A stretch of 64,000 nt of DNA, taken from the NCBI RefSeq assembly GCF_006345805.1, contig NC_043008.1:78058001-78122000 (forward strand). The letters are read 5' to 3'. Within the stretch, counting starts at the first letter, position 1. The number at the start of each line of letters is the position of its first letter. Origin of the DNA: Octopus sinensis (lineage: Eukaryota). The position numbers and the translations under genes are program-made. Positions 1 through 46,128 of the stretch are shown piece after piece. The notes under the pieces were generated by a model. It did not search any database. It worked only from the letters and a program-made list of their open reading frames with translations, and was not told the DNA's origin.

Positions 1-255
1 TTATATATATATATATATACATTATATATATATATAATATTATATAATTATATATTATAATATATATATATGTACATATATACATACATGCATATATATA
101 TATATATATATATATGTATTATACATATGAAAAAATTTATATATAATGCATATACGTATATAAATATATAAATGTATATATAAATACATATATATATATG
201 TGTGTATATGTGTATATATAAATGTGTATATATCTATAACTACATACATATAGAT

Positions 256-287
<32 letters not shown>

Positions 288-297
288 CGATATAGAG

Positions 298-342
<45 letters not shown>

Positions 343-407
343 GTAGGTAGGTAGGTCGATATATATATATATATATATATATAGATAGATAGATATATAA
401 TAGATAG

Positions 408-448
<41 letters not shown>

Positions 449-452
449 TATA
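1..452. repeat. (TA)n / (GATA)n microsatellite block
   Basis: Direct inspection. Similar simple-repeat blocks recur throughout the window and account for most Y/I-rich ORFs in the track. Confidence 0.95.
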
Positions 453-1000
453 GATAAAACTTACTTGGAAAAGGATGCGTGGCGATCGATCATTATAATA
501 TAAAAATATAATACATATATGCATATATACATATATGTACATACCTACATATATATGTATATATACATGCATATATGGGTACAGAACATAAAAAAATCGT
601 TGAACACAATGGGAAACGAAAACAAAAACAAAAACATAGAAACGAACTTTTTTCAAACAAGGAAAAAAATAGAATACAAGACATGCAATACAAGGAATAT
701 GCCCCTTCTTCAGTTGTCCCTGTTTCATCTACTCCGCGCTGCGAAGTTAAGAACAAAACGTGGAGTAGATAAAATAGGGACAACTGTATTTTTCGTTGTT
801 TTAAAAAGGGAATTTTTTTTTATGTTTTCGTTACTCATTGTGTTCAACGTTTCTTTGATGTCCTGTACCCATATATGTATGTATATATACATATATATGC
901 AGGTATGTACATATATGTATGTATATATGCATATATTTATATATTATTTATATTATTATATGATCGAACGCCACGCATCCTTTTCGAAATAAATTTTATC
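453..1000. repeat. ~550 bp fold-back (palindromic) element, probably PLE pseudo-LTR derived
   Basis: Left arm gataaaacttacttggaaaaggatgcgtggcgatcgatca matches the reverse complement of tgatcgaacgccacgcatccttttcgaaataaattttatc. Central stem 711-738/759-786 with a 20-nt loop. Arm sequence is homologous to 5130-5300, next to a GIY-YIG fragment. Confidence 0.75.
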
Positions 1001-1664
1001 TTAATAATTATGATGCGCGCTCTTCTCCTTTACTATTTCTTCTCTGTCTATCTCTCTCCCTCTCTTGTTCTTCATCCTTTCTGATTTTCTCTCCCACCCT
1101 TCCCTATTCTTCTCCTCTCCCTTTCACCGTTCCCTCTCTCTTACTCCTCCTCCTCCTCCTCCTCCTCATCGACTCTCTCGTCACTGACACGTGATGAGAG
1201 GGAAGCCATCTTTCTGACTGCTATCTTCACCAAGACTAGACCAGCTTAACCTGTCTCTTTCATATGCTGTCTCCTTAAGTGTTCAGAATAATTTTTCCAT
1301 CGTCTTGACTTAACCGCCCTCATCGTTTGTTTTTACTGTTTTGTTCTCATTGTTCTGTCTTTTACCGTTTTTTACTTGTTTATTGTTCTTACTGTTTTGT
1401 TCTTACTGTCCTGTTCTTGTTACCACTTTTACCCTCCGCAAAAAATCCCAAATTTTATTTACTTTGCTTTGCGAGAAGGAATGTTTCAACGAAGCCGCGT
1501 CTTGTCCTTACCTTCGAAAAGACATATATAAGTATGTCTACATGCTGGAAATAACAGTCAAAACTCGTATTTAAATCGCCAAAATACATTGATAGTACTA
1601 CAGAAATCAACCGTCCGAACGCAAACGGACTAAGACAATCACGAAAACAAGCATGGAGTGTCGT

Positions 1665-2685
1665 TCTATCTTTTCTCTTTTCAAAGAAAATATTTCTCCT
1701 AGCGTTCACTACTTTCCTCTCGTTCTGGACTAAAGACCCTCGATGTTGGTTTTCGTCCGGTTTCCTTGTATGTCTCCACTCTCCTGTTTTGTTCCCAACT
1801 TTGACTCTCCATACATCCTAAATTTTATTTTAGAATTTATGGGATCAACTGGCTTTGAAGATTCATATTGCCATTGAATGCTCGAAATGAGGAGTAGATT
1901 GACAGCCGACAACTGATAAAGGGTCCGTTCTCTGTGTTTACTTGTTCTGTTTTCCATGTTTTCTCTCATTATTTACGTATTTAACTCGTTTGTTTACGCA
2001 CTTCATGTAGTTTGTACAGTTGGTGATGTCCTGAGGCCATATATGCATACATATATATATTATTTATTATAATTATTATTATCTATGTAAACGCGATGCA
2101 TCCATTCCCAAGTACGTTTATCTTCATCTGTTTGATGCGAATCTACTCTATACTGTTAATTTCATCCTTCTCTTATTCCATTTTCTCCCCTCCCTCTTTC
2201 ACCGTTTTCTATCTGTCTTTCTATCGTTGCTCACATATGATCATCGTCCATCTTTCTTTTCTATACGTGATCATTGTTCTTTTCCTGCATGGACGTTCAA
2301 AAGAATGGACGTTTTATTTCTTTCTCTTCTATCTTTTCTCTTTTCAAAGAAAACATTTCTCCCAGCGTTCACTATTTTCCTCTCGTTCTGGCCTAACTAT
2401 TCTCTATGTTTGTTTTCGTTCAATTTCCTTGTGTGTCTCCACTGTCCTGATTTTGTTTCAAAATTTGACCCTCCATCAATCCTAAATTTTATTTTCGAAT
2501 TCATGGGAACATGTTGTCGTTGTATGCTCGAAATGAGGAGTAGATAGACAGCCGCTAACTGCTGAAGGGTTCTTTCTCTGTGCGTGCTTGTCCTGTTTTA
2601 CATTTTTTCTCTCGTTGTTTGCGTATTTAACTCGTTGTTTACGTATTTCATGTTGTTTGCACAGCTGGTGAAGTCTTGTACTCAT
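1665..2685 (+). repeat. Two diverged tandem copies (about 1665-2042 and 2326-2685) of a dispersed repeat
   Basis: Shared ttcaaagaaaa..ttctcc.agcgttcactat ... ctcgaaatgaggagtagat.gacagccg..aactg. Further copies near 7090-7290 (+) and 45845-46075 (-). Confidence 0.7.
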
Positions 2686-2726
2686 ATATATATATATATA
2701 TAATATATATATATAATATATATATA

Positions 2727-2847
<121 letters not shown>

Positions 2848-2909
2848 TTATTACTATTATTTAATTGAACGCGAAGCAAACATTCCTGAGTAAGTATATA
2901 TATATATAT

Positions 2910-2950
<41 letters not shown>

Positions 2951-2951
<1 letters not shown>

Positions 2952-3248
2952 GAGGCGCAATGGCCTAGTGGTTAGGGCAGCGGACTCGCGGTCATAGGAT
3001 CGCGGTTTCGATTTCCAGACCGGGCGTTGTGAGTGTTTATGGAGCGAAAACACCTAAAAGCTCCACGATGCTCCGGCAGGGGATTGTGATCCCTGCTGTA
3101 CTCTTTCACCACTCTTTCTCTCACTCTACTGTTGGCCTGCTTGCTTAGCCAGCGGGGTGGCGTCATTCGAAGGCTAAAACAATGCGAACGCATTGTGACC
3201 AGCGATGTGTAAAACATCTGATGGTCTGGTCGGTCACGTGATCACGTG

Positions 3249-3249
<1 letters not shown>
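2951..3249 (+). mobile_element. tRNA-derived SINE (family A)
   Basis: A box tggcctagtggtta and B box ggtttcgatt, non-tRNA body, cacgtgatcacgtga tail. Inverted copy at 46566-46859. Confidence 0.8.
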
Positions 3250-3291
<42 letters not shown>

Positions 3292-3306
3292 ATGTGTGTA
3301 AGTGTG

Positions 3307-3388
<82 letters not shown>

Positions 3389-3742
3389 AGAAAGAGAGAG
3401 AGAGTTTAAAATGTTGTACCGATGTATATTATGAAAAAGGAGGCAGTCAGGATTTTGGATAATTCTTTACTACCTCAAACTCGTCAAGCCTAAATCAAAA
3501 CCAAAATGGTAAAAACAGAACGTTTCATTGTTCATTTATACGAATCGGATGCTTTTTTGTTTATCTAGATGCAGACAATATTGTTTTTGTTTTGGGGAGA
3601 GGTGGGGAGAGAAAGAAAGAAAAGGAAAAGGAGTGGTATGTAGGCAGAGAGAGTGAGAGAGAGTGAGAGATGTTTCAGGACATTTAAGAAAGAGCAGAAA
3701 ATAATAAAAGATGAGGACAGGATAGCTAGCTAGCTAGCTAAC

Positions 3743-3866
<124 letters not shown>

Positions 3867-3884
3867 GAGTCAGAGAGGCAGAGG

Positions 3885-4658
3885 CTTCTTTTCAATTTGC
3901 TGTGGTAAATTCATTGAAATTTCATTATAAAGCATTTTTCTTTCTTCTTTCTCATTTTTTTCTCCTTTCTTCCCATTTTACACCTAGCAACATATTTGTA
4001 TATAAGCACATTTTCACACAAGGGCTGGTGACCTTTCACAGATGTTAATTTTAAAAAGTAGGATGGAAAAAAAACAAGAAAAGAAGGGAGAGAGCGGTCA
4101 TCACTGAAAAATGAAAAAGAGTACAGAGTTCAAAGTCCTATGAAAATGCATGTTCTTTACACTTCTATAGTGAAGTCCCATATACTGTGTAATTCCATGT
4201 TTTGCATGAACAAACATTAAATATCAGTAAAGTATTCACAAATTAGGAAAATAAAGTCAGAAAATTAAAAGATATTTTGGTACTGTTTATAATTCAATCT
4301 ATACTCTATGTGCATTTAATCAAACACCATAAAATAGATTTTCATGTATATTGTATATTAAGCTGGAAGCCACTCTGTAGGATATAAATTATATAATACA
4401 ACAGGGCCTGCTTAAATACATTTTTGAGTAACTCTCATCCTTTTGTAGGATTTCTTTTTCTTTTTCTTGCTTGAATAAGATAAGTTTTCTGTTTTTACTT
4501 GGATAAAATAATTCAAAAGTGATCTTTTTCACGAATTACTTTGCCAAGTGGCAACATTAGATATCTTTCCTAATCAGTGGTAAAATGGTTCTAGTATTCT
4601 CTCTCGGGTATATGTAATTTCTATAAGAACAATAATTGGCAAAATCCCAATGTTATAT
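3885..4658. repeat. Left arm of a ~750 bp inverted repeat (partner 6295-7030)
   Basis: Co-linear reverse-complement match, e.g. gctggaagccactctgtaggatataaattatataat vs attatataatttatatcctacagagtggcttccagc; roughly 80% identity by eye. Confidence 0.85.
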
Positions 4659-4660
4659 GC

Positions 4661-4691
<31 letters not shown>

Positions 4692-4829
4692 TGCGCACGC
4701 GTGTATCTATTTATGGAGATGAGTATCACGTTATTAACATTGGAGCCACATTTAGAAAAACAGTAATAGTGTAATAATAAATGAAAACATTGTTTTCATT
4801 TCATTTATCATAATTACTATTAAAAAAAA

Positions 4830-5300
4830 TAAATATGTAGTTTCTCTGCTTCTCTTTCAAACACTTGTGCCATTCCTCTTGTCGGATATGCTGTCTGTGA
4901 ATTCTTGCACGATGGCAGAGGGAATTGCTTGCTTCGCCAATGTAATTTTCCTTGCAGTTGTGGCAAGTAATGCAGTATATGAGATTCTGCGTCTTACAGT
5001 TCATTTACGTTGAGAAAGAATCCGATCTTGAATTTTACGTGGGAACCGTTATTGTTGTTAGGAATTCTTAGTTAGGAAGACACGCCAGAATCCAGTTGCA
5101 ATGAATTACCATTCCTGTCCTCACTTTCGAAACACGCTGGAGTTGAACTAGGGACAGCTGATGAAGGGGATTTTTCCTTGTGTAGTTGTCTTGTACTCTG
5201 TTTTTTCGTTGTTAAAAAAATGGTCCGTTCCATGCTGTTTTTACTTTTTCGTTTCTCGTTGAGTTCTACGTCTATTTGTGGTGTCCTGTACACACGTATA
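4830..5300 (-). mobile_element. Penelope-like element fragment: GIY-YIG endonuclease plus inverted pseudo-LTR piece
   Basis: CKTQNLIYCITCHNCKENYIGEASNSLCHRARIHRQHIR fits the PLE GIY-YIG signature (IYCI.C..C...YIGET...L..R...H). Confidence 0.8.
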
Positions 5301-5467
5301 TATATTTATATATGCATGTATATATACATGTAGATGTAGGTACGTACATATATGTTTGTATGCATGCATATATTTTATTTATTACACTATTGTATGACTG
5401 AGCGCCCTCGCGTCGATTCGATTCGTTTCGTTTCGTTTCATTTCTTCTTCTTCTCTAAGCTGGTTTA

Positions 5468-5550
<83 letters not shown>

Positions 5551-5703
5551 AAATAAATATAAGAGAGTGGTCACTATATGGCTCACTCTAGCACCAGTTA
5601 ATCCAAAAGTTTCAACCACAAAAATACATGTTTCCCATGAAAGTCAGTACGATTGTTAGCTCACACGGACAGGGCAAATAAAAAATAACAAAAATACAGA
5701 TTA

Positions 5704-5785
5704 TTTTGGGACAATTGTTTCGCTATTAATGAATTAAATGTAATTTTACTTACAAAAAAATCCACTTGTAGCTCGTCAGCCAAAA
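5704..5785 (-). ncRNA. Type I hammerhead ribozyme, fully canonical (H1)
   Basis: Minus strand: ttttgg-CTGACGA-GCTA-(42 nt loop)-TAGC-GAAA-CAATTG-TC|ccaaaa. Stem I 6 bp, stem II 4 bp with G10.1-C11.1, palindromic stem III ACAATTGT, GUC cleavage between 5710 and 5709. Confidence 0.85.
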
Positions 5786-5953
5786 CTATCTGGATGAAAT
5801 CCACTCAATCACACGCCAGATTTTACCATAACGATAAATACGCGTGTGGTTCAATTGATTACATCCGACGTTATAATTCAAATGCCCCAACCAACAGCGC
5901 GCCAAACTTTCACGGAAAACAAAGACTGCATTTAGAAATAAATGTAGCATAAT

Positions 5954-6099
5954 TATAATTAATTAATAAGGGTGAGAGAATTAGATACTAATTTAATAGT
6001 ATAATAATCCAGGTTTCTCGGAGCACTAGGCCACTTGGTGTTGAATAGATATACTATTAAATTAGTATCTAATTCTCTCACCCTTATTAATTAATTATA
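5954..6099. repeat. Perfect 50-bp inverted repeat with 46-nt loop
   Basis: 5954-6003 (tataattaattaataagggtgagagaattagatactaatttaatagtata) is the exact reverse complement of 6050-6099. Confidence 0.92.
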
Positions 6100-6231
6100 T
6101 ATATATATATATACTTACATACATACATACATACATATATATTATATATATATACATACATACATACATACATACATACATACATACAACATACATACAT
6201 ACATACATACATACATACATACATACATACA

Positions 6232-6294
<63 letters not shown>

Positions 6295-6299
<5 letters not shown>

Positions 6300-7030
6300 A
6301 CATTGGGATTTTGACAATTGTTGTTTTTATAGAACTTAGATATACCCGACAAAGAATACTAGAACCATTTTACCACTGATTAGGAAATATATCTAATGTA
6401 GCTACTTGGCAAAGTAATTTGTGAAAAAATCTTTTGAATTATAATAATCCAAGGAAGCAAGAAAAAGATAAAGAAATTCTACAAGTGGATGAAATCTACT
6501 CAAAGATATATTTAAGCATACCCTTCTTCATTATATAATTTATATCCTACAGAGTGGCTTCCAGCTAAATATACAATATACATACAAAAACTCATTTATA
6601 ATGTTTGATTAAATGTACATAGAGAATAGATTAAATTATAAACAGTACCAAAATGTTTTTTTTTTTATATTCTGACTTTTATTCTAAATTTTTATTACTG
6701 TACTATTTAATGTTTGTTCATGCAAAACATGAAATTACACAGTATATGGGACTTCACTATAGAAGTGTAAAGGAATATACATTTTCACAGGACTTGGAAA
6801 TTTGAACTCTTTTTCATTTTTCAGTGATGACCGCAATCTCCTCCCTTTTTTATCTTTTCCATCCTACTTCCTAAAATTGACATCTTTCCCTTGCGAGAAA
6901 ATGTGCTTATATACAAATATGTTGATAGGTATAAAATGGGAAGAAAGGAGAAAGAAACGAGAAAGAAGAAAAGAATGTGATTTTTAATGAAATATCAATG
7001 GATTGATTGCATCAAATTGAAAAGAAACTC
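6295..7030. repeat. Right arm of the ~750 bp inverted repeat
   Basis: Reverse complement of 3885-4658, from ataacattgggatttt to atcaaattgaaaagaa. Confidence 0.85.
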
Positions 7031-7286
7031 TCCTCTCTCTCCCTCTCCCTCCCCCTCTCTCTCTATCTTTATCTATCAATCTATCTATTTACCTCTCTAT
7101 CTGCCTGTTCTTGAATGCGCGGAATGAGTAGTAAATAGACAGTCGACAACTAATGAAGGGTCCTTTCTCTGTGTTTACTTGTCCCGTTCTCCTTTTTTTG
7201 TCGTTACTTATGTATTTACGGGTTTGTTTACGTATTTCATGTTGTTTGCGCCTTTGGTGAGGTCCTCTACCCATGTATACATGTGT

Positions 7287-7319
<33 letters not shown>

Positions 7320-7329
7320 CGAGCAAAAC

Positions 7330-7683
7330 GTCTGCCCCCTGTTCAATGGACGGTGCTGAGTAGTCAAATATTTAAACCAAATTTTCACAAAACTTGTCCG
7401 ACCGTCCCATATTTGATAAATACTGATTTAACCTAAATTTGAAACACCAGCAAAAGAAGAAATAAAGATAGACTTTTTTCTATTCCAAGATAAACGATTT
7501 TACAAATGCATGTTCCCACGGCTTTATCGATCACATTCTCACCTGGAATAGATTTTTGTAATTTTTTCAGAATCTCTACACGCCCTGATATCGTCGGTAC
7601 CTACATATCAAATTTGAGCGCAATCGGATGGAGGATGCCCGAGATCCTTGAAGACACACACACAGACAGACAGAACGGATTAT

Positions 7684-7690
<7 letters not shown>
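7330..7690 (+). mobile_element. Non-autonomous element with a Helitron/Helentron(HINE)-like 3' end
   Basis: caaatttgagcgcaatcggat...acacacacagacagacagaacggattatatata resembles DINE-1/HINE termini from recall; no coding sequence. Confidence 0.4.
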
Positions 7691-7727
<37 letters not shown>

Positions 7728-7862
7728 AATGTGTATATATATGCATACATATATATATGTATATATATACATATATGTTTGTATATATATATACACATAC
7801 ACACTCACGCTCACACTCACTCTCTCTCTCTCTCTCTCTCTCTCACGCACACACATACTCAC

Positions 7863-7928
<66 letters not shown>

Positions 7929-8373
7929 GGCATTTTCTGGAATTTACGTAGAAAGCTGCGAATTCCGTGCCGTTTATTTTGTTCTATCAATTACAATATA
8001 AGTAATTGAAATTTTTATCTGAAAACCTTAGCAATTAGCTGATTATTAGGCGCGCATACTGTCAATTTTATATAACAATAGGAAAAATTCATTTGTATAT
8101 TTGAAAGCTTCCTGAATGTAAAAATTATGAGAGTTGATATTAACCATGTCTTTGTCCATACCCCTCCCTACCTGCTTCGTGATTTAGAAACACCGAGATC
8201 CCTCTTCTGAAGAACTATTTCGTGCAAGAAACTCCTTTTCCATGTCACTAAACTTCAATAATTAAAACTCATTAACTTCTCCTCCTTATTCCTATAATCT
8301 CCACCATTCCTCTTTAACTAACCTCACTGGCAGAAGTTAATCACTTTCTAAAATAATTTAAAACAAAACTCAC

Positions 8374-8465
8374 CACTGATCAACGGTGTCATCATAACGT
8401 TCCACACAAGCTATCGTCGTTAGATCATCGAATCCTCCAATCACAAATATTGTGTCTTCCAACAG
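8374..8465 (-). CDS. KLHL10: KLHL10 homolog exon 5 (sixth Kelch repeat); not in the ORF track
   Basis: Found by reading the minus strand: acceptor catattag|CTG, LLEDTIFVIGGFDDLTTIACVERYDDTVDQ(W), donor TG|GTGAGT. 92 nt, phase 0 to 2; continues exon 4 in frame after a 10.9 kb intron. Confidence 0.88.
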
Positions 8466-10043
8466 CTAATATGATTTTCACATTCACGAGGGAAATAAAA
8501 GTTAATTAGAAAAAGGATTAATGAAAACAAAATAACATAAAAACATTACACAAATAGTTAGATTATTTAAATTGCTCGTGACATTCTGTAAGATTATTTG
8601 CCTTAGATTAAAAGTAAAAATTATTTGATTCCCAGAAGAAAGGACTTTGATTTGTGCATGGGGGTGGATCTGGTTTTATTAATATTTCTTATTCATTAAA
8701 TGTAGAGCAATGAATATTTATTGAACACTGCAACTCATTATTAAAGGAAAGGTTAGATATATTTGTCAGGCCCATGTTATATTACTGGTATATCCGTTCA
8801 TTAACCTAGTCATTGATTTTTTTCTTAAACAATTAAGTAGATAAATGGTGAAGATATATTTCGTTGAGTTCAATTCCAAAACTAATATCAACTTCAATAG
8901 CATAGCCGTTTGATTACTTGGTCATTCTTTTCGGTCTTCTTTCCCTATTTCTCTAGCTGTATTTTATTAGTAATTATTTTATGTAACCTGAATATATCTC
9001 TATATGTAATCATCTTTTAATTTCACTATTAAGTGCTTCCACAATCAAGTAGCATCGAATGTGAAGTCAAAAGCTCTTGATTAGAAGAAACTGTGGCAAA
9101 AAAATTACATCTTGTTCTCTGGTACTTATTAAATATTATATACTTATTTTGGACGAGAAAAAGCATTCAGAGGAGAGAAAAGATATTTTGCGGTTCATGT
9201 CTTTCCCAAGAGAGTTGTGGCGAAAGTGAAAGCTTAAATCAAGGATTGAATTAGCATCGCAGTTTCGACTATCTACTTATCGCTTCATCTAGAACATATG
9301 CTAGTCAGAGCCGTTAGAATTCCGGATTAAAGACGTTAATGATTTTAGTTTCGTTTTTATATATTTTCACTTAAAACGCCGCTTGTGTAGTTACAAAATA
9401 TCAATTATATATTCCAAATAGTTCAATAAATCACAAATTTGCAGATGATAGTAGTTGGGAATATTTTAATTTAATGACTAAATGAAACAATGGAAGGCAA
9501 AATGGACTTCGTAGGGATTTGAACTGAGAATGTTAAAAATCCGAAATACAGATCCAAAAGCATTCTGTCCGAAAGCATTTAATGAAGCTGAAACTTTTTG
9601 CTTGCCAATTGCAACTTCAAGGGGATATATTCTTTTGAAAAGATAATGAGTTATTTCCCTTGAAATATAAAATTTGGCAGGAAATTTTCACTGTATTTTT
9701 ACGTAAAAGCAATCATACCAAAATAGTTAAACCTAAGAAAAGCTGGGAAGTATTATTTCCATGCTAGGAGGAAGTGGATTTTCAGCGTATTTCAGGTGCA
9801 ACATTCAGAGTTTTACTTGTCTAGCAAGTGACATGTTTTGAAGGTGCGTGAGGCATATAAGAAATACACAAGTCTGTGAAATTCTCTTTAACGTCACTTT
9901 TTCGGCTTTGTGAGTCGAGGAAGTGGTTATCTAAGGAGTAACTTTTATCAAAGGAATAATAATAATAATAATATAATAATAATAATAATAATAATAATAT
10001 CGTAATAATATCTTCAAATTTTACCATAAAAGCAGCACGTTTT

Positions 10044-10230: not shown

Positions 10231-11809
10231 AGATATTCCTTGGAGAATCTAATATTAAAAGTGTAATCCTCCAAGGTGACTCGTTTTCTCCGTTACGTTT
10301 GTAATTATACTAATACCCATAACAATGACACTTAGGAAAGTTCTGTTTATGGATGACCAGAAATTGTTTGGGAAATCTGAAAAACAGATAGATTTCTTAG
10401 CCAGAACAATCCAGAAATGTGGTAGGGATATCGGGATGGAATTTGGGATTACCAAATGCTCAGTACTTAATATGAAAAGAGGGAAGAAAGCAGCCGGCAG
10501 AGGATTGCGATTATCATCAAGAGAGACCATGGATGAACCCGACGGTAATGGGTATAGAAGTTTTGGGATTTTGGAGCTAGATAACATTCTACACAGAGAA
10601 ATGAAAGTCAAGGTCATCCAGTCGTATCAAAAAAGGGTGAAGATAGTGTTGAAATCCAACCTGAATGCCAAACATTTGATTACCACAATGAATATCTGGG
10701 CAGTTGCGGTGGTCAGATATAGTGCATCCATCCTCAAATGGACTAAGGAGGAAATATATCAACACTGGATACAAGGACGAGAAAGTTGATGGTGCTGCAT
10801 GGGGCACTACACCCTAAAGCAATCGTAAACAGACTGTATATGAAAAGAAAGAATGGTGGCAGCGGACTAATTATTATAGACCATTGTATAAGGAGTGAAA
10901 GGAGAACAAATAGTGATGAATACCTACAGCAATATGCCGCGAAAGATATAATTGTAAATGCAGATGAAATGATGGGCAAGGAAAAGAGAAAGGAAGATCT
11001 TCTTGAAATGAGAATGCATGGACTGTTTGAAAGGAATGCGCAAGGCGTTAAGGATAATACAGCATCGTGTATTATCTTGAGCGAGGTGATTTGAGGCGTA
11101 CCACCGAAAGCTTGATTAATGCTGCACAAAACTAGGCTCTCGCTACCAATTCAATGAAGTATAACATCTATAAAACTTCTGATACCCAGAAATACAGACT
11201 CTGTGCAAAGAGCGTGGAAAATGTGACCCACTTGGTAAAAGAATACTTGATAAAAGAATACAAGCGCTGCCACAATAAAGTGAGTGTGTATCTTCATTGG
11301 CTCTTATGCCGTAAATGCCAATAAGAAGTAACAGAGAACCGTTATGAGCATGTACCAAGTAAAGTTCTGCAGGAGGATGGGAAAGTAACGATAGTCTGGG
11401 ACTATCGAACACCGTTGACTGGATATTGTTATATTTAATAAGAAAGACAAATACTCTCACATCGTTGATGCAGCCATACCAAATGACATGAATGTTGTGA
11501 GTAAAGAGGCTGAAAAAAAATCACCAAGTACTCCGAATTGAAAGTGGAAATGTCAAGACTGTATGGAATGCGAGAGAGTAATGTAAAAGTGATACTAGTG
11601 GTGATAGGAGCGTTGGGCTCAATCCCACTAAAATTTCAAAACTTCTTAAGGAAACTGGAAATCCCATGCAAGATTGATGTCTTGCAAAAAGCAGCCTCAT
11701 TGGGCACAGCGCACATCTTAAGGAAAATATTACCTGTCTGAGATCCTTGTTGTGACTGACAGATGACTAAAGACTCCGGGACGCGTTTTACCTACACTGT
11801 GTTACGAAG

Positions 11810-11811
<2 letters not shown>
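10231..11811 (+). mobile_element. R4/Dong-type non-LTR retrotransposon, 5'-truncated and decayed (D1)
   Basis: RT motifs QGDSFSP and LFMDDQKLFGK...IGMEFGITKC, WAVAVVRYS, HGALHPK, C-terminal LVVIGALG...LQKAASLGTAHILRKIL; ends in (AAT)n. Confidence 0.88.
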
Positions 11812-11870
<59 letters not shown>

Positions 11871-11960
11871 GTAATAATAATAATTATTATAATAATAATA
11901 ATAATAATAATAATATATAATAATAATAATAATAATAATAATGATAATTATAATAATAAT

Positions 11961-12834
11961 AACAGAACAGCAACGGACCATGATAAAATGATGGCAAGAA
12001 AAGTCCCTTCATGGCAAATACTGGACTAAACTAAATGCAAAAGAAATAGACAAAGAAAAATCCCAGCAGTGGTTGAGACGCTCAGGACTTAAAGCAGAGA
12101 CAGAGGGATTTTTAATTGCAGCACAAGACCAAAGCCTCCCCACCAGGAATTACCAAAAACATATAATGAAAAGAAATATAACAAGTAACTGCAGAATATG
12201 TGGAGATGGACAAGAAACAATAAATCATATTATCTCTGGCTGCCCAGTCCTGGCTAAGAAGGAATATATTCACAGACACGACAGAATTGGGACCTACATA
12301 CACTGGAAGCTATACCAACATTATGGAATAACAACAGAAAAAAGATGGTATAGGCACATCCCAGAAAAGGTCACAGAAAACGAGAAAGCAACCACACTCT
12401 GGGATATGCCAATACACACAGATAGAGAAATTAAGGCCAACAGACCAGATATAATTGTCAGAGATCATGAAGGAAAAAATGCTTTCTAATTGATATATCA
12501 ATACCAGCAGATGACAACGTGTCTCTAAAAGAAATGGAGAAACTTTCAAAATACACAGACCTGGAAATAGAGGTAACTCGAATGTGGAATCTAAAAACAG
12601 AAACAATTCCTATCATAGTAGGTACATTAGGCATGATAAAAAAATATTCAGACAAATACATAACAAAACACCAGGATTTAAAAACACATATAACATACAG
12701 AAAATCGCACTACTGGGCACTGCCCACGTCCTAAGTAACCATCAGAGCATCACAACAAAACACAACACATATCCAAGGCACACAGAGCTGCGCTCGGTAG
12801 TGAAGTGAAAGCACAATATAAAAAAAAAACACTG
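11961..12834 (+). mobile_element. R4/Dong-type LINE 3' fragment (D2): CCHC knuckle and restriction-like endonuclease
   Basis: CRICGDGQETINHIISGC...HRHD...ANRPDIIV...LIDISIP.D..KEMEKLSKY.DL; flanked by (AAT)n on both sides. Confidence 0.9.
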
Positions 12835-13170: not shown

Positions 13171-14210
13171 GATAATAAAAGAGAGGGAAGAAGACTGATT
13201 GGATGCGAACGCAGCATTTGAGCAGATGAAAACAACATAGCATAGTATGTAAAAAAAAAATGCTACAGAACCGCTATTATTGGAAATAAGAAGGTCAGGT
13301 TTATGTAGGATGGAAGATTGCAAAGATAATGCATTGTACAGGGACTTGAGAATTAAGGAAACTGAAAATAGGCGGATAAAGAAAAGAATGCATGGACAAT
13401 TTCATAGTGATGCTAGAGATAAGAGAGACAGAAAAAGATGGCTATGGATGACTAAAAGTAATTTAAAACCAGAAACAGAGGCTCTAATCTGTGCTTCCCA
13501 AGAGCAAGTACGAGGTACAAATTACATCAAATACAGAATAGACAATACATCAGAAAGTGCAGAGTTTCTGGACAAAATGGTGAAATCGTATGGCATGTTA
13601 CCAGTCAATGTACGCTACTAGTCTAGAAAGAATATATGAGACGTCATGACAATATAGCAAGGATTGTTTATTGGACACATTGCAACAAGTATGGAATTGA
13701 CAAAGCAAAAAAAAAATGGTACGAACATAAACCCGAAGGCATAATCGAAAATGATAATCCAAAGATCCGATGGAATTTTATGATTTAGTGCGACCATGAG
13801 AATAAGAAACCAGACATAGTCTTAATTGAGAAAGAAAGCAAATTATGCTGGATTATAGATATAGCAAGTCCAGCTGACAACAAGGTATGCGATAAGGAAG
13901 TAAAAAAAGTCGATAGGTTTGATAGGTTAGCTTAGGAGGTTAAACAGTTGTGGTTGCTGAAAAAGATAGTAGTAGTATCAATAATTGTCGGAGCCCTGGG
14001 AACAGTAAGTAAAAATCTTGAGAAGTACATGGAACAAATAAGGCTTGCAATAAGGGTGGAACACTTGCAGAAAACAGCACTGCTTGGAACTGCTCGACTA
14101 CTCCGGAAGGTGCTCGAAAAATAAGAGGTGTTACCTTAGTTCACAGGTAGTGAACAGCTGGTACCGTAGTACATCTCCAGTGTTAGAAGTTGTGCATAGA
14201 CATTAAAGAA
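13171..14210 (+). mobile_element. R4/Dong-type LINE 3' fragment (D3a)
   Basis: MHGQF...WLWMTKSNLKPETEALICASQEQ, KPDIVLI, IVGALG, LQKTALLGTARLLRKVL; followed by an (AAG)n tail. Confidence 0.88.
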
Positions 14211-14385: not shown

Positions 14386-15420
14386 TAATAAAAGAGAGGG
14401 AAGAAGACTGATTGGATGCGAACGCAGCATTTGAGCAGATGAAAACAACATAGCATAGTATGTAAAAAAAAATGCTACAGAACCGCTATTATTGGAAATA
14501 AGAAGGTCAGGTTTATGTAGGATGGAAGATTGCAAAGATAATGCATTGTACAGGGACTTGAGAATTAAGGAAACTGAAAATAGGCGGATAAGAAAAGAAT
14601 GCATGGACAATTTCATAGTGATGCTAGAGATAAGAGAGACAGAAAAAGATGGCTATGGATGACTAAAAGTAATTTAAAACCAGAAACAGAGGCTCTAATC
14701 TGTGCTTCCCAAGAGCAAGTACGAGGTACAAATTACATCAAATACAGAATAGACAATACATCAGAAAGTGCAGAGTTTCTGGACAAAATGGTGAAATCGT
14801 ATGGCATGTTACCAGTCAATGTACGCTACTAGTCTAGAAAGAATATATGAGACGTCATGACAATATAGCAAGGATTGTTTATTGGACACATTGCAACAAG
14901 TATGGAATTGACAAAGCAAAAAAAAAATGGTACGAACATAAACCCGAAGGCATAATCGAAAATGATAATCCAAAGATCCGATGGAATTTTATGATTTAGT
15001 GCGACCATGAGAATAAGAAACCAGACATAGTCTTAATTGAGAAAGAAAGCAAATTATGCTGGATTATAGATATAGCAAGTCCAGCTGACAACAAGGTATG
15101 CGATAAGGAAGTAAAAAAAGTCGATAGGTTTGATAGGTTAGCTTAGGAGGTTAAACAGTTGTGGTTGCTGAAAAAGATAGTAGTAGTATCAATAATTGTC
15201 GGAGCCCTGGGAACAGTAAGTAAAAATCTTGAGAAGTACATGGAACAAATAAGGCTTGCAATAAGGGTGGAACACTTGCAGAAAACAGCACTGCTTGGAA
15301 CTGCTCGACTACTCCGGAAGGTGCTCGAAAAATAAGAGGTGTTACCTTAGTTCACAGGTAGTGAACAGCTGGTACCGTAGTACATCTCCAGTGTTAGAAG
15401 TTGTGCATAGACATTAAAGA
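14384..15420 (+). mobile_element. Near-identical tandem copy of D3a (D3b)
   Basis: Identical to 13171-14210 including inactivating stops; I saw only homopolymer-length differences. Confidence 0.88.
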
Positions 15421-16045: not shown

Positions 16046-18600
16046 GAGTTCGGATCTCACTGAATGAACCCACTCAGCACCGTAGTTGTGGGAAACCTCT
16101 TGGTTCCAGATGTTATTTCAAAACTGGCAGGTTTCCTCTGCTTTAGATGTATTATCTTTTGTATCTCCACTTAATCTCTTAAAATCCTGCCATTGACTAT
16201 TTGTAAATAATCTGTTTTGCTGGAACTGCGATATACAATCAGTGTAGCCTTGTACTGTCAATGATTTTGCTCCAACACGTTGTTTTAGGGTTTCAGTAAC
16301 AGTTTTGAAACTTTTCTTTCCTGTTTGGTATTTTGTTTCAAGATATGCCCTCACAATTTCTTTCCATTGTCCTTTTGGACCAGTCAATTTCGGGATAACA
16401 TATGGGGGCAGGAGATTTCCCACAACCACGGTGCTGAGTGGATTTATTCAGGGAGATCCTAACCCCATCACCCTGTGGCTCCACGACAGGACCACGTATG
16501 CATAACAACAGAAGATGTAATTACACTTGTATCAAAACTGCCAAACTGGAAAGCGACAGGACCAGACAGAATCCAAGGCTACCGCTCAAGTGACTTGGTC
16601 AACACACAAACGAATTGTGTTTCAATTAGACAATTGCCTACAGAGTGGTGCAGTTCCATAATGGATTGTAGAGGGAAAGACAACATTGTTGAGGACAATG
16701 AGGTTAGCAATTACCAACCCAAAGTTTGTCTTAAACTCTTACGGAAAGTGTTAACAAGCATCCACGTAGGGAAAATATATACGTTCCTTGCGGAAAACAA
16801 TCTACTCCCAGTAGAACAAAGGGGGATGCAGAAAAGAATCCAGAGCGCCAAGGACCACCTTGTGATAGACAAGGTCGTAATGAAGAACTGCAAACGGTAC
16901 CAAAAAACTTGTGCATGGCCTGGATATTCTTTAAAAATGCTTACAAGATCTTGCCACATTCATGAACTCTGGAAACATTCGACATGTGCGGAATAATTGA
17001 GAATGTGTGTGCACTGATTAAGAACAGCATGCCTCCAGCACCTATCTGAGGTAACAATCAAAAGATGTATCTTCCAGGGAGATTGTTATTCACCTTTCTC
17101 ATTTGTTATAGCCTTGATCTCACTTTCTGTAGTTCTACGCAAAGTTAACGCGCACTATGAGTTGAGAAAGAATGTGTCTCGTCTCAACTATCTTCTCTTC
17201 ATGGAGGATTTAAAACTGTTCGCAAAAGCAAAACCTGAAATGGAGAGGCTGGCTGAGACTGTACAGATATACAGCAATAATATAAGGATAGAATTCGGTA
17301 TCTAGAAGTGTACGGTGCTCACTTTGAAACGGAGGAAAAGAGCAGATTGTAGGGGCCTAGAACTTCCAAACGGAGAACGAATAGGAGACTCAGGTGACGA
17401 TGGGTACAAATAGCTTGAGATCTTGAAGGTGGAGAATATCTTACACAGAGAAATGAAAGACAAGGTCACCACTGCATATTTTTGGAGCGCCTCAGATTAC
17501 TCTTGAAGTCAAAACTCAACTCAAGGAACCTTGTGACTGCCATCAATATATGGGCTGTTACTGTAGTCCACTACAGTGCACCCATTTTAAAATGGACACG
17601 AGATGAGATTGACCAACCCGATCACACTACTCCAAAGACGATAACAATGCATGGTGCCCTCTACCCTAAGGCGAAAGTACATGGGTTCTACATGAAGAGG
17701 TGAAACGGTGGACGTGGCCTGATTTTCGCACGAGAGTGCATCAATACTGAAAGAAAAAACATGGCAGAGTATTTGGTAATCAACGAACTAGACCTGCTAC
17801 AGTATGCTGCTAGAACAAAAGGATTTAACCAAAACGGACTAAAAAATGCTATGAATCCCGATCACTAATAGCCAACGAGAGAGAAGAAACTCTACTCCGC
17901 ATGGAATTACGTGCTCAATTCCACCGTGAACTTAAAAGACCAGAAAGCATCAAGTGTGACCTTAAAAAGAAGACTGAAGATCTAATCATTGCTGCTCAGG
18001 ATCAGGCATTGAATAGCAGCTCAATGAAAAGGGATATAGACTACACAAGAACAGCGAACCTCTGAAGAATGTGTGGGAAGAAGGTCGAAAGCATGACCTA
18101 CATGGGAAGTACTTGTGAAAGTCTTGCACAGAAAGAGTATAAATGCAAACACGACAAAATAGTCTAAAGCCTTCACTGACTACTATACCGGAAGTATGGA
18201 TACGAGGTAACAGGTGTTTTGCACCAACATACACAGTAAAGATAATGGACGAAAACGAGAAGGCAAATATCTTTTGGTGTTTGACTTCCAGTCAGACAAG
18301 GTGTTAGAGTACCGAAGGCAGGATATAGTAACCTTTAAGAGGGACAAACAAGAGTGCCTAATAATCGACATGACAATGCCAGGAGATCAACCTATTATCA
18401 TAAATGAAAGAGAAAATGTTGATAAATATGGAGACCTGAGAATTAAGGTCAGCAAGATGTAGCAGCTGCGAGACTTAAACATAAAGGTTGTCTCTGTTGT
18501 CATCGGAGCATTGGGTTCAATACCACCCAACCTGAAGAAACATCTGGAAAGGTTAGAAATACCTTACAACCGTGGAGTATTGCAAAACTTGGTTTTATTT
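16046..18600 (+). mobile_element. R4/Dong-type LINE (D4) with inverted 5' segment
   Basis: Plus strand from ~16408: KLPNWKATGPD, EQRGMQK...KDHLVID, IFQGD..SPFSF, LNYLLFMEDLKLFA, RLE motifs. 16046-16407 encodes the upstream region (LKQRVGAK...QFQQNRLF...CQFW) on the minus strand. Confidence 0.85.
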
Positions 18601-41609: not shown

Positions 41610-43830
41610 TGGGACGAAAACAACTGCGTGAGAGGACAAGTTCGGCCAGACGTAGGAGTGTGGATGTGTAAGGTTGGGGGTTGGGTCGAAGATCAAGTAA
41701 ATGTTGGAGTGCACGCAGCCCCTCATGGTGATGGATCGCCGTGTATAGACTCTTGATGTCAAAAGTGAAGAGAAGTTTAGAGGGGCCAGGATGGAAGGAT
41801 ATAGGGTTGAACAAACGAAGAGCATGGTTGGCGTCATGGTTGTCAGAGGGGAGGGAAGCCACTAGGGGAGCAAGGACACGGTCAAGATATCTGGAGAATT
41901 GTTCGGTGGGGCAGTTGCTGTCGGAGACAATGGGGAGGCCAGGGTTGTTAGGTTTGTGGATTTTGGGGAAGAAGTAAATTGTGGAAGTGTGAGGGGTGCG
42001 GACAATGTGGTTAGCGGCGGTGGAGGAGTTGGGAAGAGGATATGAGGTCATGGAGAGTGGAGGACACAATCTGTTGGTAGCTGGGCGTGGTGTTGGAGGG
42101 CAGTAGGCAGTAGAAGGAGGTGTCTTGAAGTTGGCGGAGAGCTTCCGCCTTGTAGAGGTCCGCGCGCAACACCGCCACGGCACCACCCTTATCGGCCGGT
42201 TTTATGACGATATCCGTGCGGCATCGGAGACATCGAAGGGCTGAAAGTTTGGCTGGGGAGATGTTCTGATGTCGGGGACGCTTGAAAAACCGGTCCACAA
42301 CACGCTGGCAGGCGCCCGCAAAAAGATCGACTACTTGGAACTGGCGTCCACTTGGATGGTCGGCGGCCCAAGTCGGTGAAGCAGTCCTCATCATTAGATG
42401 CAGGTGGAGTGCCGCGGAAAAGCACGCACAAAGCTGTGGATATCGGAACGAGTCTGAAATTCGTTGCTGGATAGAGTGAGGGGGATGAAGCGCAGACCCT
42501 ACTGATGAGGGAGCGTTCCGCCTCAGAGAAGGGAAGATCTGGAGGAATGGCAACAACAGACTGAAATGGAGAAGGGGTGGATGGGACAGAAGTAGGAGGG
42601 GTGGTGGGTTGTGGTTGGTGGGAGGGTATGTAGGTGGGGTATTTGGAGGGACGGGGTTTGGTAAGGGTGGGGGAGCGTATTAGTGAGAGAGGCGTAGGGG
42701 AGGAGTTGGGGTAGTGACATCGGGTGTGATGGAATGGAGGAGAGATTGGAGTATACGTTGTTTGGTGTGAGTGAGAAATTGACGAAAGAGATTATTTAAA
42801 TGAATTATGTAACGTAAAGTAGTATTACCATCGGAAGGCGGTCGCTGTTGTGTATTTTGGAGAGATTAGAACGAATGGTGGCGCGCATAAGACGGTAGGA
42901 TGTAGTACGGAGTATGGGTTGGATTGCTGAAGCATAGTGGAGAGTGGGGTGACTGCAGAGGCGTGGTTTTATGAAAATTAGTAAGGAAAGGTTAATAGGT
43001 TGAAATCAGCGGAAAGGAAGTGTGGAAAGGTGTTTTTTAGGCGGTGGTGAAAGTGGAGGAGGAAAGGTTTGTAATCGGGCATCATTGAAAGACGAGAAGA
43101 AAAGAGAGAGAAAGGTAATAAAGATGTGAGGAGAAAAAATTCAAAACGAGTGGGGAGAAAATGCAAAAGGCGTGAGGAGAAAAAATGCAAATGGCGTGAA
43201 GAGAAAAAATACAAGAGGTGGGAGAAGAAGAAAAATAAAAACAAGGAGAGAAAGGAGGAAGACGGAAGAAACAAAGAGAAAGAGAAAGAAAGGGAGAAGA
43301 GTAGGCAAAAGAGGAAAAGAAAGGGAGGGAAAGAGGAGAAATGTAACAAGTGCGGATTGAGAGAAACGACAATAGGAAAAAGCAGAAAGTACAAAAAAGT
43401 TTAGAAAAATCCAAAAGGTTCAAATGCCTTGGTGTATTGGAGCGATTTCTCATCAAAGAAGAGTCCAGCATAATCCATGGGTAGGAGAGGTGCAGCCGAA
43501 GTGTAGGAGTCCAGGTGTAGAAGAGGAGAAGAAAGTCCAGGTAGAGAATCCAGGTACAATAGTCCAAAGTTCGAAGTGGAGGTAGAAACAGGATAAAACC
43601 AGTGTGAACACGTGAGTGTGTAATATATAGCGAGAATTTACAAAAGAAAAAATACCAAGATCGGGAAGTGAGAAAGTCTTTTATGTTTTGAGCTTATGCT
43701 CTTCGACAGAAAGGAACACAGAAATAAACAGGGAAGGAAAATAGAAAAAGGCATAGTGGCTAAGAATCTATCATGGCGAATGCCGGACAGAGGAGTCACT
43801 CAGGTGGGAAATAATAAAGTAGTGGTGATC
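41610..43830 (-). mobile_element. Penelope-like element (Neptune-type) RT N-half with 5' pseudo-LTR
   Basis: IVIKPADKGGAVAV, FFPKIHKPNNPGLPIVS..CPTE..S.YLD, LFTFDIKSLYTAI.H.EGL.AL...LLRLAELVL; pLTR at about 43590-43830. Confidence 0.9.

Positions 43831-45811: not shown

Positions 45812-45843
<32 letters not shown>

Positions 45844-46086: not shown

Positions 46087-46128
<42 letters not shown>

What the first reader, a model, noticed from the sequence alone, without database searches (positions are those of the whole stretch)
5704..5785. Intact canonical hammerhead ribozyme on the sense strand of KLHL10, downstream of exon 5
Seen: every conserved core nucleotide is present (CUGACGA, GAAA, GUC), with a 6-bp stem I, a 4-bp stem II and a palindromic stem III. 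It is on the minus strand like KLHL10, 2.6 kb past the exon 5 donor. Known: PLE pseudo-LTRs carry minimal type I hammerheads that cleave as dimers through palindromic stem III (Cervera and de la Pena 2014; Lunse et al. 2017). Inference: the last KLHL10 exon must lie further downstream, so this motif is probably transcribed in intron 5, where self-cleavage could compete with splicing or truncate the pre-mRNA of a spermiogenesis gene. It is intact while neighbouring PLE sequence is decayed, which fits either a young insertion or retention.
Basis: partly seen in the sequence, partly recalled or inferred. Interest (0 to 1): 0.8.

Follow-up and report, generated by a model that had tools for sequence, protein, structure and literature searches.

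The report
Lone transposon-type hammerhead ribozyme in KLHL10 intron
A complete hammerhead self-cleaving RNA motif really is present on the sense strand of a KLHL10-like gene's intron, but it looks like a solitary leftover of a Penelope/retrozyme-type mobile element, a common kind in invertebrate genomes, with no evidence that it acts on the host gene.

Summary
On the minus strand at 5786-5703 there is a type I hammerhead with every core nucleotide: CUGACGA, GAAA and a GUC cleavage triplet, cutting between 5710 and 5709. It has the G10.1-C11.1 pair, a 7-bp helix I and a 4-bp helix II. Helix III is one C-G pair capped by the palindromic loop AAUU.

A descriptor scan finds two such motifs in the window, against 0.006 expected from 3601 shuffles. 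Rfam misses this one because helix II continues into a 45-nt structured extension.

The motif sits in a ~290-nt, 36% GC, highly self-paired unit (z = -5.5). That unit lies in a 534-nt block inserted between two (TA)n arrays. A decayed Penelope-like GIY-YIG endonuclease remnant lies 660 nt away on the same strand.

The KLHL10-like gene is on the minus strand. The exon 5 donor is 2587 nt upstream of the motif, and the last exon is not in the window, so a sense, intronic position is likely.

Best reading: a solitary retrozyme-like or pseudo-LTR relic. Its weak palindromic helix III needs a second copy, and none is nearby, so cleavage of the pre-mRNA is probably poor. Regulation of KLHL10 is untested speculation. 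It is a new member of a known kind, of modest interest.

The parts
5703..5786 (-). Type I hammerhead motif: helix I, core, helix II, GAAA, helix III, GUC site
   Evidence: Read directly. Found by the descriptor scan. Expected by chance 0.0058 per window.
5697..5792 (-). Hammerhead with extended helix I: 7 bp, an A5787/A5702 mismatch, then 5 bp
   Evidence: MFE fold of 5800-5690: -28.3 kcal/mol, z = -4.9.
5773..5779 (-). Core box CUGACGA (C3-A9)
   Evidence: Sequence.
5722..5772 (-). Helix II: G10.1-C11.1 and 3 more pairs, a CA/AA internal loop, then an 8-bp and a 5-bp helix capped by GUAAAA
   Evidence: Folds: -12.6 kcal/mol against -4.9 +/- 2.3 for shuffles.
5718..5721 (-). Core box GAAA (G12-A15.1)
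   Evidence: Sequence.
5711..5718 (-). Self-complementary ACAAUUGU. As a monomer it gives a 2-pair helix III with tetraloop AAUU. Between two copies it gives an 8-bp duplex.
   Evidence: Sequence. The 8-nt duplex folds at -6.4 kcal/mol.
5709..5710 (-). Predicted cleavage site, 3' of C17 (5710) and before C1.1 (5709)
   Evidence: Standard hammerhead numbering applied to the sequence. Cleavage was not tested.
5631..5921 (-). About 290-nt, 36% GC, highly self-paired unit. It has a closing long-range helix, a 73-nt hairpin (5866-5792) and the hammerhead hairpin.
   Evidence: The 401-nt fold of the minus strand gives -119.5 kcal/mol, z = -5.5. The plus strand gives -84.3, z = -4.0. There are 103 pairs, with 15 G.U on the minus strand against 5 on the plus strand.
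5562..6095 (-). 534-nt block between two (TA)n arrays. It holds a 146-nt palindrome (6099-5954) and the hammerhead unit. Read as an insertion into a (TA)n microsatellite.
   Evidence: TRF finds (TA)50 at 5466-5561 and a TATA array at 6096-6299. The palindrome was found.
4822..5040 (-). Decayed GIY-YIG endonuclease remnant of a Penelope-like element. Only the first half of the domain is present, with stops upstream, and no reverse transcriptase is nearby.
   Evidence: Pfam GIY-YIG E = 9.6e-4, below the family cut-off. 325 relatives. The top relatives carry RVT_1 plus a C-terminal GIY-YIG. tblastn E = 1e-16.
8374..8465 (-). Fifth coding exon of the KLHL10-like gene (LLEDTIFVIGGFDDLTTIACVERYDDTVDQW), followed by a GTGAGT donor
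   Evidence: tblastn and translation.

Best explanation
This is a genuine type I hammerhead ribozyme motif carried by a small non-coding mobile unit of the Penelope/retrozyme world. The unit is either a monomer of a non-LTR retrozyme or a detached pseudo-LTR-like piece.

Proposed origin (inferred). Multimeric transcripts of the parent element were processed by hammerhead self-cleavage. The palindromic helix III of two neighbouring copies pairs to form a double hammerhead. A copy was then reverse-transcribed and inserted by a Penelope-like RT/GIY-YIG enzyme into a (TA)n microsatellite. This placed it in sense orientation in what is most likely intron 5 of a KLHL10-like gene.

Present state (inferred). 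The copy is solitary. It is presumably transcribed only as part of the host pre-mRNA. It lacks a partner for helix III, and its core can be sequestered by an alternative pairing. It therefore probably cleaves poorly or not at all in cis, and it has no demonstrated role for KLHL10.

Shown: the motif, its statistics, the self-paired unit, the flanking (TA)n arrays, the Penelope-like endonuclease remnant, and the gene's strand and exon positions.
Inferred: the mobile-element origin, the intronic position, and the low activity.
For: - Complete core, G10.1-C11.1 and three helices.
- Two perfect-core motifs in the window against 0.0058 expected, and none added when one core mismatch is allowed.
- Helix I of 6-7 bp, helix II of 4 bp and a 1-2 bp helix III with a small palindromic loop. 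This is the architecture described for most metazoan type I hammerheads (PMC4209133) and for the axolotl HHR_Amex1 retrozyme motif (PMC7229834).
- The surrounding 290-nt unit has 36% GC and is strongly self-paired (z = -5.5). It has more G.U pairs on the hammerhead strand, 15 against 5. This fits the description of non-LTR retrozymes: units of roughly 150-400 nt, low GC, highly self-paired (PMC7229834, PMC7761336).
- The block is flanked on both sides by (TA)n, a target reported for Penelope-like elements (PMC8557442). The 3' flank of a related element, L003, also ends in (TA)n.
- A Penelope-like GIY-YIG remnant lies 660 nt away on the same strand, and a Penelope-like RT remnant lies at 42268-41617.
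- Solitary motifs are the commonest state in animal genomes (PMC4209133).
- About 43% of Xenopus retrozyme copies lie in introns (bioRxiv 10.64898/2026.07.22.740005).
- Low activity is expected. The hammerhead fold is 5.6 kcal/mol less stable than the MFE, in which GACGA pairs with UUGUC. Monomers with this helix III design cleave poorly in vitro (PMC7229834, PMC4209133).
Against: - No second copy of the unit exists in the window, and no copy could be found elsewhere. Membership of a repeat family is therefore inferred from architecture and neighbours, not shown.
- The defining tandem arrangement of retrozymes is absent.
- No Rfam hammerhead model matches.
- The 45-nt extension of helix II is unusual.
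- The internal loops sit 7 bp up helix I and 4 bp up helix II. That is the geometry where natural hammerheads make their activating tertiary contact. Monomeric activity therefore cannot be excluded.
- The strong self-pairing is also seen, more weakly, on the plus strand (z = -4.0). A DNA-level foldback element is not fully excluded.
Confidence: 0.68

Rival explanations
1. It is an active intronic ribozyme. The hammerhead cleaves nascent KLHL10 pre-mRNA, either as a monomer helped by tertiary contacts between the internal loops of helices I and II, or through host factors. This lowers or tunes mRNA output, either as a retained (exapted) function or as a side effect.
For: - Sense orientation, 2587 nt past the exon 5 donor, with the last exon further downstream.
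- Perfect core and intact helices.
- Internal loops at the canonical distances from the core.
- Precedent exists: conserved intronic hammerheads and the CPEB3 ribozyme in amniotes (cited in PMC7761336, PMC10919898).
Against: - Helix III has one C-G pair plus A15.1-U16.1 and a tetraloop. Motifs of this design need a dimer (PMC7229834, PMC6765202).
- No partner copy exists in the window.
- The MFE sequesters part of the core.
- No conservation data could be obtained.
- In Xenopus, retrozyme copies are depleted from introns but are still common there, so an intronic position alone means little (bioRxiv 10.64898/2026.07.22.740005).
Confidence: 0.1
2. It is the hammerhead of a pseudo-LTR belonging to the same Penelope-like copy as the adjacent endonuclease remnant. 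On this reading it is part of a rearranged tandem or inverted Penelope insertion, not a separate retrozyme-like unit.
For: - The GIY-YIG remnant is on the same strand, 660 nt away.
- Penelope insertions are typically complex, with partial tandems and inverted 5'-truncated copies, and they target microsatellites (PMC8557442).
- An 857-nt inverted repeat (3812-4658 and 6295-7102, 81% identical) brackets the whole region.
Against: - The hammerhead lies upstream of the endonuclease remnant with no reverse transcriptase between them.
- A (TA)50 array separates the two, which suggests separate insertions.
- The inverted-repeat arms contain no hammerhead core.
- The motif lacks two recurrent traits of Penelope minimal hammerheads: the extra base between positions 9 and 10.1, and the pattern of long helix II with short helix I (PMC4209133).
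Confidence: 0.17
3. It is a chance match, or a DNA-level foldback or MITE that happens to contain the hammerhead boxes. It has no history as a ribozyme.
For: - The descriptor was defined after the fact.
- At 0.006 per 64 kb, a multi-gigabase genome would still contain of the order of a hundred chance hits. This is an extrapolation.
- The plus strand also folds better than shuffles.
- No Rfam hit.
Against: - Two perfect-core motifs occur in one window against 0.006 expected.
- G10.1-C11.1, the palindromic loop 3 and the extended helices I and II were not part of the descriptor.
- G.U pairs are 15 on the ribozyme strand against 5 on the other.
- There is no target-site duplication or terminal-inverted-repeat signature at the unit's ends (by eye).
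- Penelope-like remnants are close by.
Confidence: 0.05

Closest known systems
Type I hammerheads of metazoan non-LTR retrozymes (Cervera and de la Pena 2020, PMC7229834), especially the amphibian HHR_Amex1 or newt satellite design
   Same: Type I topology. Helix I of about 6 bp and helix II of 4 bp. Helix III is a single pair capped by a palindromic tetraloop, so the motif is expected to be active as a dimer. It is embedded in a low-GC, highly self-paired unit of about 300 nt.
   Different: Only one copy is present, not a tandem array. Helix II continues for 43 nt beyond an internal loop, instead of ending in the conserved loop 2. Helix I continues past an A/A mismatch, instead of showing the conserved loop 1. 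No circular RNA evidence is available.
Minimal hammerheads of Penelope-like element pseudo-LTRs (Cervera and de la Pena 2014, PMC4209133; Lunse et al. 2017, cited in PMC6765202)
   Same: Animal type I motif with a very short palindromic helix III. G10.1-C11.1 is conserved. Penelope-like coding remnants are nearby. Most genomic copies of this kind are solitary.
   Different: There is no extra base between positions 9 and 10.1. Helix I is long (7 bp plus 5 bp), not 4-5 bp. Helix II is 4 bp plus an extension, not a continuous 6-8 bp. The motif is not demonstrably inside a terminal repeat.
[quoted passage not shown]
   Same: A hammerhead on the sense strand of an intron of a protein-coding gene.
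   Different: The amniote motifs have a stable helix III, cleave as monomers and are conserved across species. None of these holds or could be tested here. Rfam HH9 does not match this motif. It does weakly match the second motif in the window.

Membership tests
Hammerhead ribozyme, type I | Conserved core C3 U4 G5 A6 N7 G8 A9, G12 A13 A14, the A15.1-U16.1 pair, and H17 at the cleavage site | tested here: met
   CUGACGA at 5779-5773, GAAA at 5721-5718, U16.1 at 5711, C17 at 5710.
Hammerhead ribozyme, type I | Three helices around the core, with helix I open-ended and helices II and III closed | tested here: met
   Helix I is 7 bp (+5), helix II is 4 bp (+13), helix III is 2 pairs with tetraloop AAUU.
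Hammerhead ribozyme, type I | G10.1-C11.1 pair closing helix II | tested here: met
   G5772 and C5722.
Hammerhead ribozyme, type I | Match to a curated covariance model (Rfam clan CL00010) | tested here: not met
   No hit at gathering score or at E<=10 on 5600-5900. The probable cause is the 43-nt insertion in helix II (inference).
Hammerhead ribozyme, type I | Tertiary contact between helix I and helix II loops | not testable with these tools
   Internal loops exist 7 bp up helix I (A/A) and 4 bp up helix II (CA/AA). The conserved loop sequences of classical animal motifs are not evident.
Hammerhead ribozyme, type I | Site-specific self-cleavage | not testable with these tools
   Needs in vitro transcription or end mapping.
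Metazoan non-LTR retrozyme | Unit of about 150-400 nt, GC below about 45-50%, predicted to be highly self-paired | tested here: met
   5921-5631 is 291 nt with 36% GC and 103 pairs. The 401-nt fold has z = -5.5.
Metazoan non-LTR retrozyme | Head-to-tail tandem copies, each with a hammerhead | tested here: not met
   No second copy in the 64-kb window by blastn, nhmmer or the descriptor. Monomeric derivatives are reported in other genomes (bioRxiv 10.64898/2026.07.22.740005).
Metazoan non-LTR retrozyme | Expression as circular RNA | not testable with these tools
   No transcriptome is available.
Penelope-like element pseudo-LTR hammerhead | Located in a terminal direct repeat flanking an RT-GIY-YIG ORF | tested here: inconclusive
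   A GIY-YIG remnant lies at 5040-4822 on the same strand, but downstream of the motif. There is no RT, no direct repeat, and a (TA)50 array lies between them.
Penelope-like element pseudo-LTR hammerhead | Helix III absent or very short and palindromic | tested here: met
   ACAAUUGU at 5718-5711.
Penelope-like element pseudo-LTR hammerhead | Unpaired base between positions 9 and 10.1, enlarged helix II (6-8 bp), short helix I (4-5 bp) (recurrent traits, PMC4209133) | tested here: not met
   A9 is followed directly by G10.1. Helix II is 4 bp before an internal loop. Helix I is 7 bp.
Exapted intronic ribozyme (HH9, HH10 and CPEB3 type) | Sense strand of an intron of a transcribed gene | tested here: inconclusive
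   The same strand as the gene and a position past the exon 5 donor are shown. The downstream exon is not in the window, so the intronic status is inferred.
Exapted intronic ribozyme (HH9, HH10 and CPEB3 type) | Conservation at the orthologous site across species | not testable with these tools
   The closest available KLHL10 homologues are 48% identical. No related genome was within reach.

The most novel reading that the evidence does not exclude
The hammerhead is retained at this position in the KLHL10 intron across related species. Its unusual architecture, with internal loops 7 bp up helix I and 4 bp up an extended helix II, would let it cleave as a monomer. Co-transcriptional self-cleavage would then compete with splicing of the last intron and tune expression of a gene that in other animals is needed for spermiogenesis. 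That would be an invertebrate counterpart of the amniote intronic ribozymes.
Probability: 0.05. Interest if true: 0.7.

Novelty: new member of a known kind. Interest (0 to 1): 0.28.

Why it matters
If the best reading is right, this is one more of the thousands of Penelope/retrozyme-derived hammerheads in invertebrate genomes, and it matters little for KLHL10.

Two points have modest value:
- Curated covariance models miss this motif entirely because of the long helix II extension. Surveys based on Rfam will therefore under-count such variants, and a descriptor that allows long helix II inserts would recover them.
- A perfect-core, sense-strand, solitary hammerhead in the last intron of a conserved gene is a convenient test case for an open question: do lone retrozyme or Penelope hammerheads ever cleave host pre-mRNAs in vivo?

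Tried and rejected
- **Rfam.** A gathering-score scan of the whole window and an E<=10 scan around the motif gave no hammerhead hit for this motif. The only hit was noise: RAGATH-35, 14.5 bits.
- **Other copies in the window.** Searches for other copies of the unit or of its flanks found none (blastn word 11 and word 7, nhmmer).
- **Public metagenomes.** A search with CTGACGAGC-N40-60-GCGAAACAATTGTC gave one hit. It lies inside a bacterial coding region without the helices and is a chance match.
- **Pfam on six-frame translations of 3700-7300 (minus frames).** Nothing was found when 1200-residue strings with X at stops were submitted. The GIY-YIG signal appeared only when the 67-residue piece was scanned alone.
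- **Word-indexed protein search with that piece.** No candidates. The exhaustive HMMER search did find relatives.
- **Contigs of the two closest Penelope relatives (L002, L003).** These were fetched to compare their hammerheads. The flanks are too short and no motif passes the descriptor.
- **Last KLHL10 exon.** I searched with an HMM of homologue C-termini and a regex. It is not in the window.
- **Hammerhead remnants in the 857-nt inverted-repeat arms.** None found.
- **tRNA-derived SINE.** No tRNA-like gene in 1-9000.
- **Energy of the double hammerhead.** It cannot be computed with a nested two-strand model, because the topology is crossing. I disregard the -6.7 kcal/mol figure.
- **Transferring the minus-strand structure to the plus strand.** The result is meaningless because non-canonical pairs are not penalised.
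- **Organism identity.** It could not be established.

Full report
**1. The observation**

On the minus strand, 5786-5703 reads GUUUUGG CUGACGA GCUA (43 nt) UAGC GAAA C AAUU G UC CCAAAAU.

- Every invariant hammerhead position is present. C3-A9 is 5779-5773, G12-A15.1 is 5721-5718, U16.1 is 5711 and C17 is 5710.
- The predicted cut is between 5710 and 5709.
- The G10.1-C11.1 pair is present (5772 and 5722).
- Helix I has 7 pairs. After an A/A mismatch it continues for 5 more pairs, 5792-5788 with 5701-5697.
- Helix II has 4 pairs. It then continues through a CA/AA internal loop into an 8-bp and a 5-bp helix capped by a hexaloop. That hairpin folds at -12.6 kcal/mol against -4.9 +/- 2.3 for shuffles.
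- Helix III is A15.1-U16.1 plus one C-G pair, closed by the palindromic tetraloop AAUU. The 8-nt stretch ACAAUUGU is self-complementary.

**2. Chance**

I used a descriptor with an exact core, helix I >=5, helix II >=4 and helix III >=1.

- It finds two motifs in the 64-kb window, both on the minus strand: this one and 60397-60447.
- In 3601 block-wise dinucleotide shuffles the mean was 0.0058 per window, and 0.00056 with helix I >=7.
- Allowing one core mismatch adds no hit.
- The descriptor was written after seeing the motif. G10.1-C11.1, the palindromic loop 3 and the helix extensions were not part of it.
- No Rfam model matches this motif, at gathering score or at E<=10. I attribute this to the helix II insertion; that is an inference.
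- The second motif has a compact helix II. In a local scan it matches Hammerhead_HH9 at 22.9 bits, E = 0.0013, below the gathering score.

**3. Surroundings**

- The 401 nt from 5960 to 5560 fold on the minus strand to -119.5 kcal/mol, against -88.0 +/- 5.7 for shuffles (z = -5.5).
- The structure has three parts. A long-range closing helix joins about 5921-5901 to about 5650-5631. A 73-nt hairpin covers 5866-5792. The third part is the hammerhead hairpin.
- The 291-nt unit has 36% GC and 103 pairs.
- The plus strand folds to -84.3 kcal/mol (z = -4.0).
- The minus-strand fold uses 15 G.U pairs and the plus-strand fold uses 5. This leans towards structure at the RNA level in the ribozyme polarity.
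- The region around the second motif shows no such excess structure (z = +0.65).
- The unit has no other copy in the window.
- It lies in a 534-nt block (5562-6095) between a (TA)50 array at 5466-5561 and a TATA-type array at 6096-6299. The 5' part of the block is a 146-nt palindrome (6099-5954).
- On the same strand, 660 nt downstream, 5040-4822 encodes the first half of a GIY-YIG endonuclease. Pfam gives E = 9.6e-4, below the family cut-off.
- An exhaustive HMMER search finds 325 relatives of that piece. In the best ones the match lies near the C-terminus of proteins that also carry RVT_1, which is the canonical Penelope-like layout. tblastn gives E = 1e-16.
- No reverse-transcriptase sequence lies near it. 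A separate Penelope-like RT remnant is at 42268-41617.
- An 857-nt inverted repeat (3812-4658 and 6295-7102, 81% identical) brackets the region. It contains no hammerhead core.

**4. Gene context**

- The 329-aa ORF at 32090-31101 (minus strand) carries BTB, BACK and Kelch domains. Its named homologues are kelch-like protein 10, with 48% identity at best.
- tblastn with homologues places five collinear coding blocks on the minus strand: 32036 to about 31130, 24453-24310, 20074-19898, 19648-19361 and 8465-8374.
- The fifth block ends in ...DQW followed by GTGAGT.
- The remaining about 32 residues (YRSALSxCVV...) are found nowhere in the window.
- The motif therefore starts 2587 nt past the exon 5 donor, in sense orientation. 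It is most likely intronic, with the last exon beyond the window start. The intronic position is an inference.
- The organism could not be verified.

**5. Mechanism**

The architecture is the one described for most metazoan type I hammerheads: helix I of about 6 bp, helix II of 4 bp, and a helix III of 1-2 bp with a small palindromic loop (PMC4209133). Such motifs fold into a double hammerhead when two copies are adjacent.

- An axolotl retrozyme monomer with a one-pair helix III and palindromic tetraloop cleaved only 6% in an hour, whereas dimers cleave well (PMC7229834).
- Single Penelope minimal motifs showed no detectable cleavage (PMC4209133; see also PMC6765202).
- Non-LTR retrozymes are units of roughly 150-400 nt (monomers of about 300 bp). 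They have low GC, are highly self-paired and are thought to be mobilised by Penelope-like elements (PMC7229834, PMC7761336, bioRxiv 10.64898/2026.07.22.740005).
- Penelope-like elements favour microsatellite targets including (TA)n and form complex tandem or inverted insertions (PMC8557442). The 3' flank of a related element, L003, also ends in (TA)n.

I therefore read the block as a solitary retrozyme-like or pseudo-LTR-derived unit inserted into a (TA)n array next to an older Penelope remnant. In its present state three things argue for poor cis cleavage:

- There is no partner for helix III within the window.
- The hammerhead fold is 5.6 kcal/mol less stable than the MFE, in which GACGA of the core pairs with UUGUC.
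- Monomers of this helix III design cleave poorly in vitro, as cited above.

Against that, internal loops lie at the canonical distances in helices I and II, so an activating tertiary contact cannot be excluded.

**6. Comparison and novelty**

- Relative to retrozyme hammerheads, this one lacks the tandem arrangement and the conserved loops, and it has an unusual helix II extension.
- Relative to Penelope minimal hammerheads, it lacks the extra base between positions 9 and 10.1 and the pattern of long helix II with short helix I.
- Relative to amniote intronic hammerheads, it lacks a stable helix III, and conservation is unknown.
- Intronic copies are common for such elements: about 43% of Xenopus retrozyme copies are intronic (bioRxiv 10.64898/2026.07.22.740005).

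It is a new member of a known kind.

**7. Verdict**

The motif, its strand, its distance from exon 5, the neighbouring decayed Penelope sequence and the dimer logic all hold. The assignment to a pseudo-LTR is not shown. An effect on KLHL10 splicing is speculation that the helix III design argues against.

Interest is 0.28. The most novel reading not excluded is an exapted, monomer-active intronic ribozyme, with probability about 0.05.

Noticed in passing
window 60397-60447 (minus strand); Rfam alignment spans 60455-60381: A second perfect-core hammerhead motif: GUCACCA CUGAUGA GCUU-UCGUUCU-AAGC GAAA CUAAACUGG UA UGGUGAU. Its helix III is non-palindromic, 4 pairs with a 3-nt loop, and the cleavage triplet is GUA. 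It matches Rfam Hammerhead_HH9 at 22.9 bits (E = 0.0013 in a local scan, below gathering score). Its surroundings are not unusually structured, and the sequence is unique in the window.
   Followed up: partly
window 4822-5040 (minus strand): Remnant of the first half of a Penelope-like GIY-YIG endonuclease (NLIYCITCHNCKENYIGE...), with stops upstream and no reverse transcriptase next to it.
   Followed up: yes
window 41617-42268 (minus strand): Penelope-like reverse-transcriptase remnant. tblastn hits come from the same RT-GIY-YIG proteins that match the endonuclease remnant. Pfam alone gives no hit for these ORFs.
   Followed up: partly
window 3812-4658 and 6295-7102: 857-nt inverted repeat, 81% identical, bracketing the hammerhead block and the endonuclease remnant. 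It has no coding signal and no hammerhead core. Its nature is unknown; it could be the arms of a foldback element or inverted copies of a transposon end.
   Followed up: partly
window 452-1001 and 5954-6099: Two palindromes (self reverse-complementary), about 550 nt at 70% identity and 146 nt at 80%. Part of the first (784-972) resembles 5198-5406, between the hammerhead block and the endonuclease remnant.
   Followed up: no
window 619-726 (minus strand): A loose hammerhead-like hit: CUGAAGA ... GAAA, with helix II made of A-U, G.U and G.U, and helix I made of G.U-rich low-complexity sequence. 0.027 such hits are expected per window. It is probably chance.
   Followed up: partly
window 1664-2073, 2327-2717, 7111-7319, 45841-46279: A repeat family of a few hundred nt. 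Two copies lie about 650 nt apart in direct orientation, and further copies lie just outside the right arm of the inverted repeat and at 46 kb.
   Followed up: no
window 10325-12489 and 16475-17703 (plus strand); 13280-13621 and 14599-14832: Fragments of non-LTR-type reverse-transcriptase ORFs in KLHL10 intron 4. One has a Pfam zf-RVT hit. Two ORFs 1.3 kb apart share an identical 77-residue peptide, which indicates a local duplication.
   Followed up: partly
window 33564-35427 (plus strand): Two long ORFs (165 and 250 aa), just upstream of the KLHL10-like start codon and on the opposite strand, with no Pfam hit. By eye they resemble a hAT-type transposase; this was not verified.
   Followed up: partly
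window 49511-50449 (minus strand): A 312-aa ORF, very rich in Ser, Asn and Thr in its second half, with no Pfam hit. It lies in a GC-richer stretch (42-50 kb) with strong GC skew.
   Followed up: no
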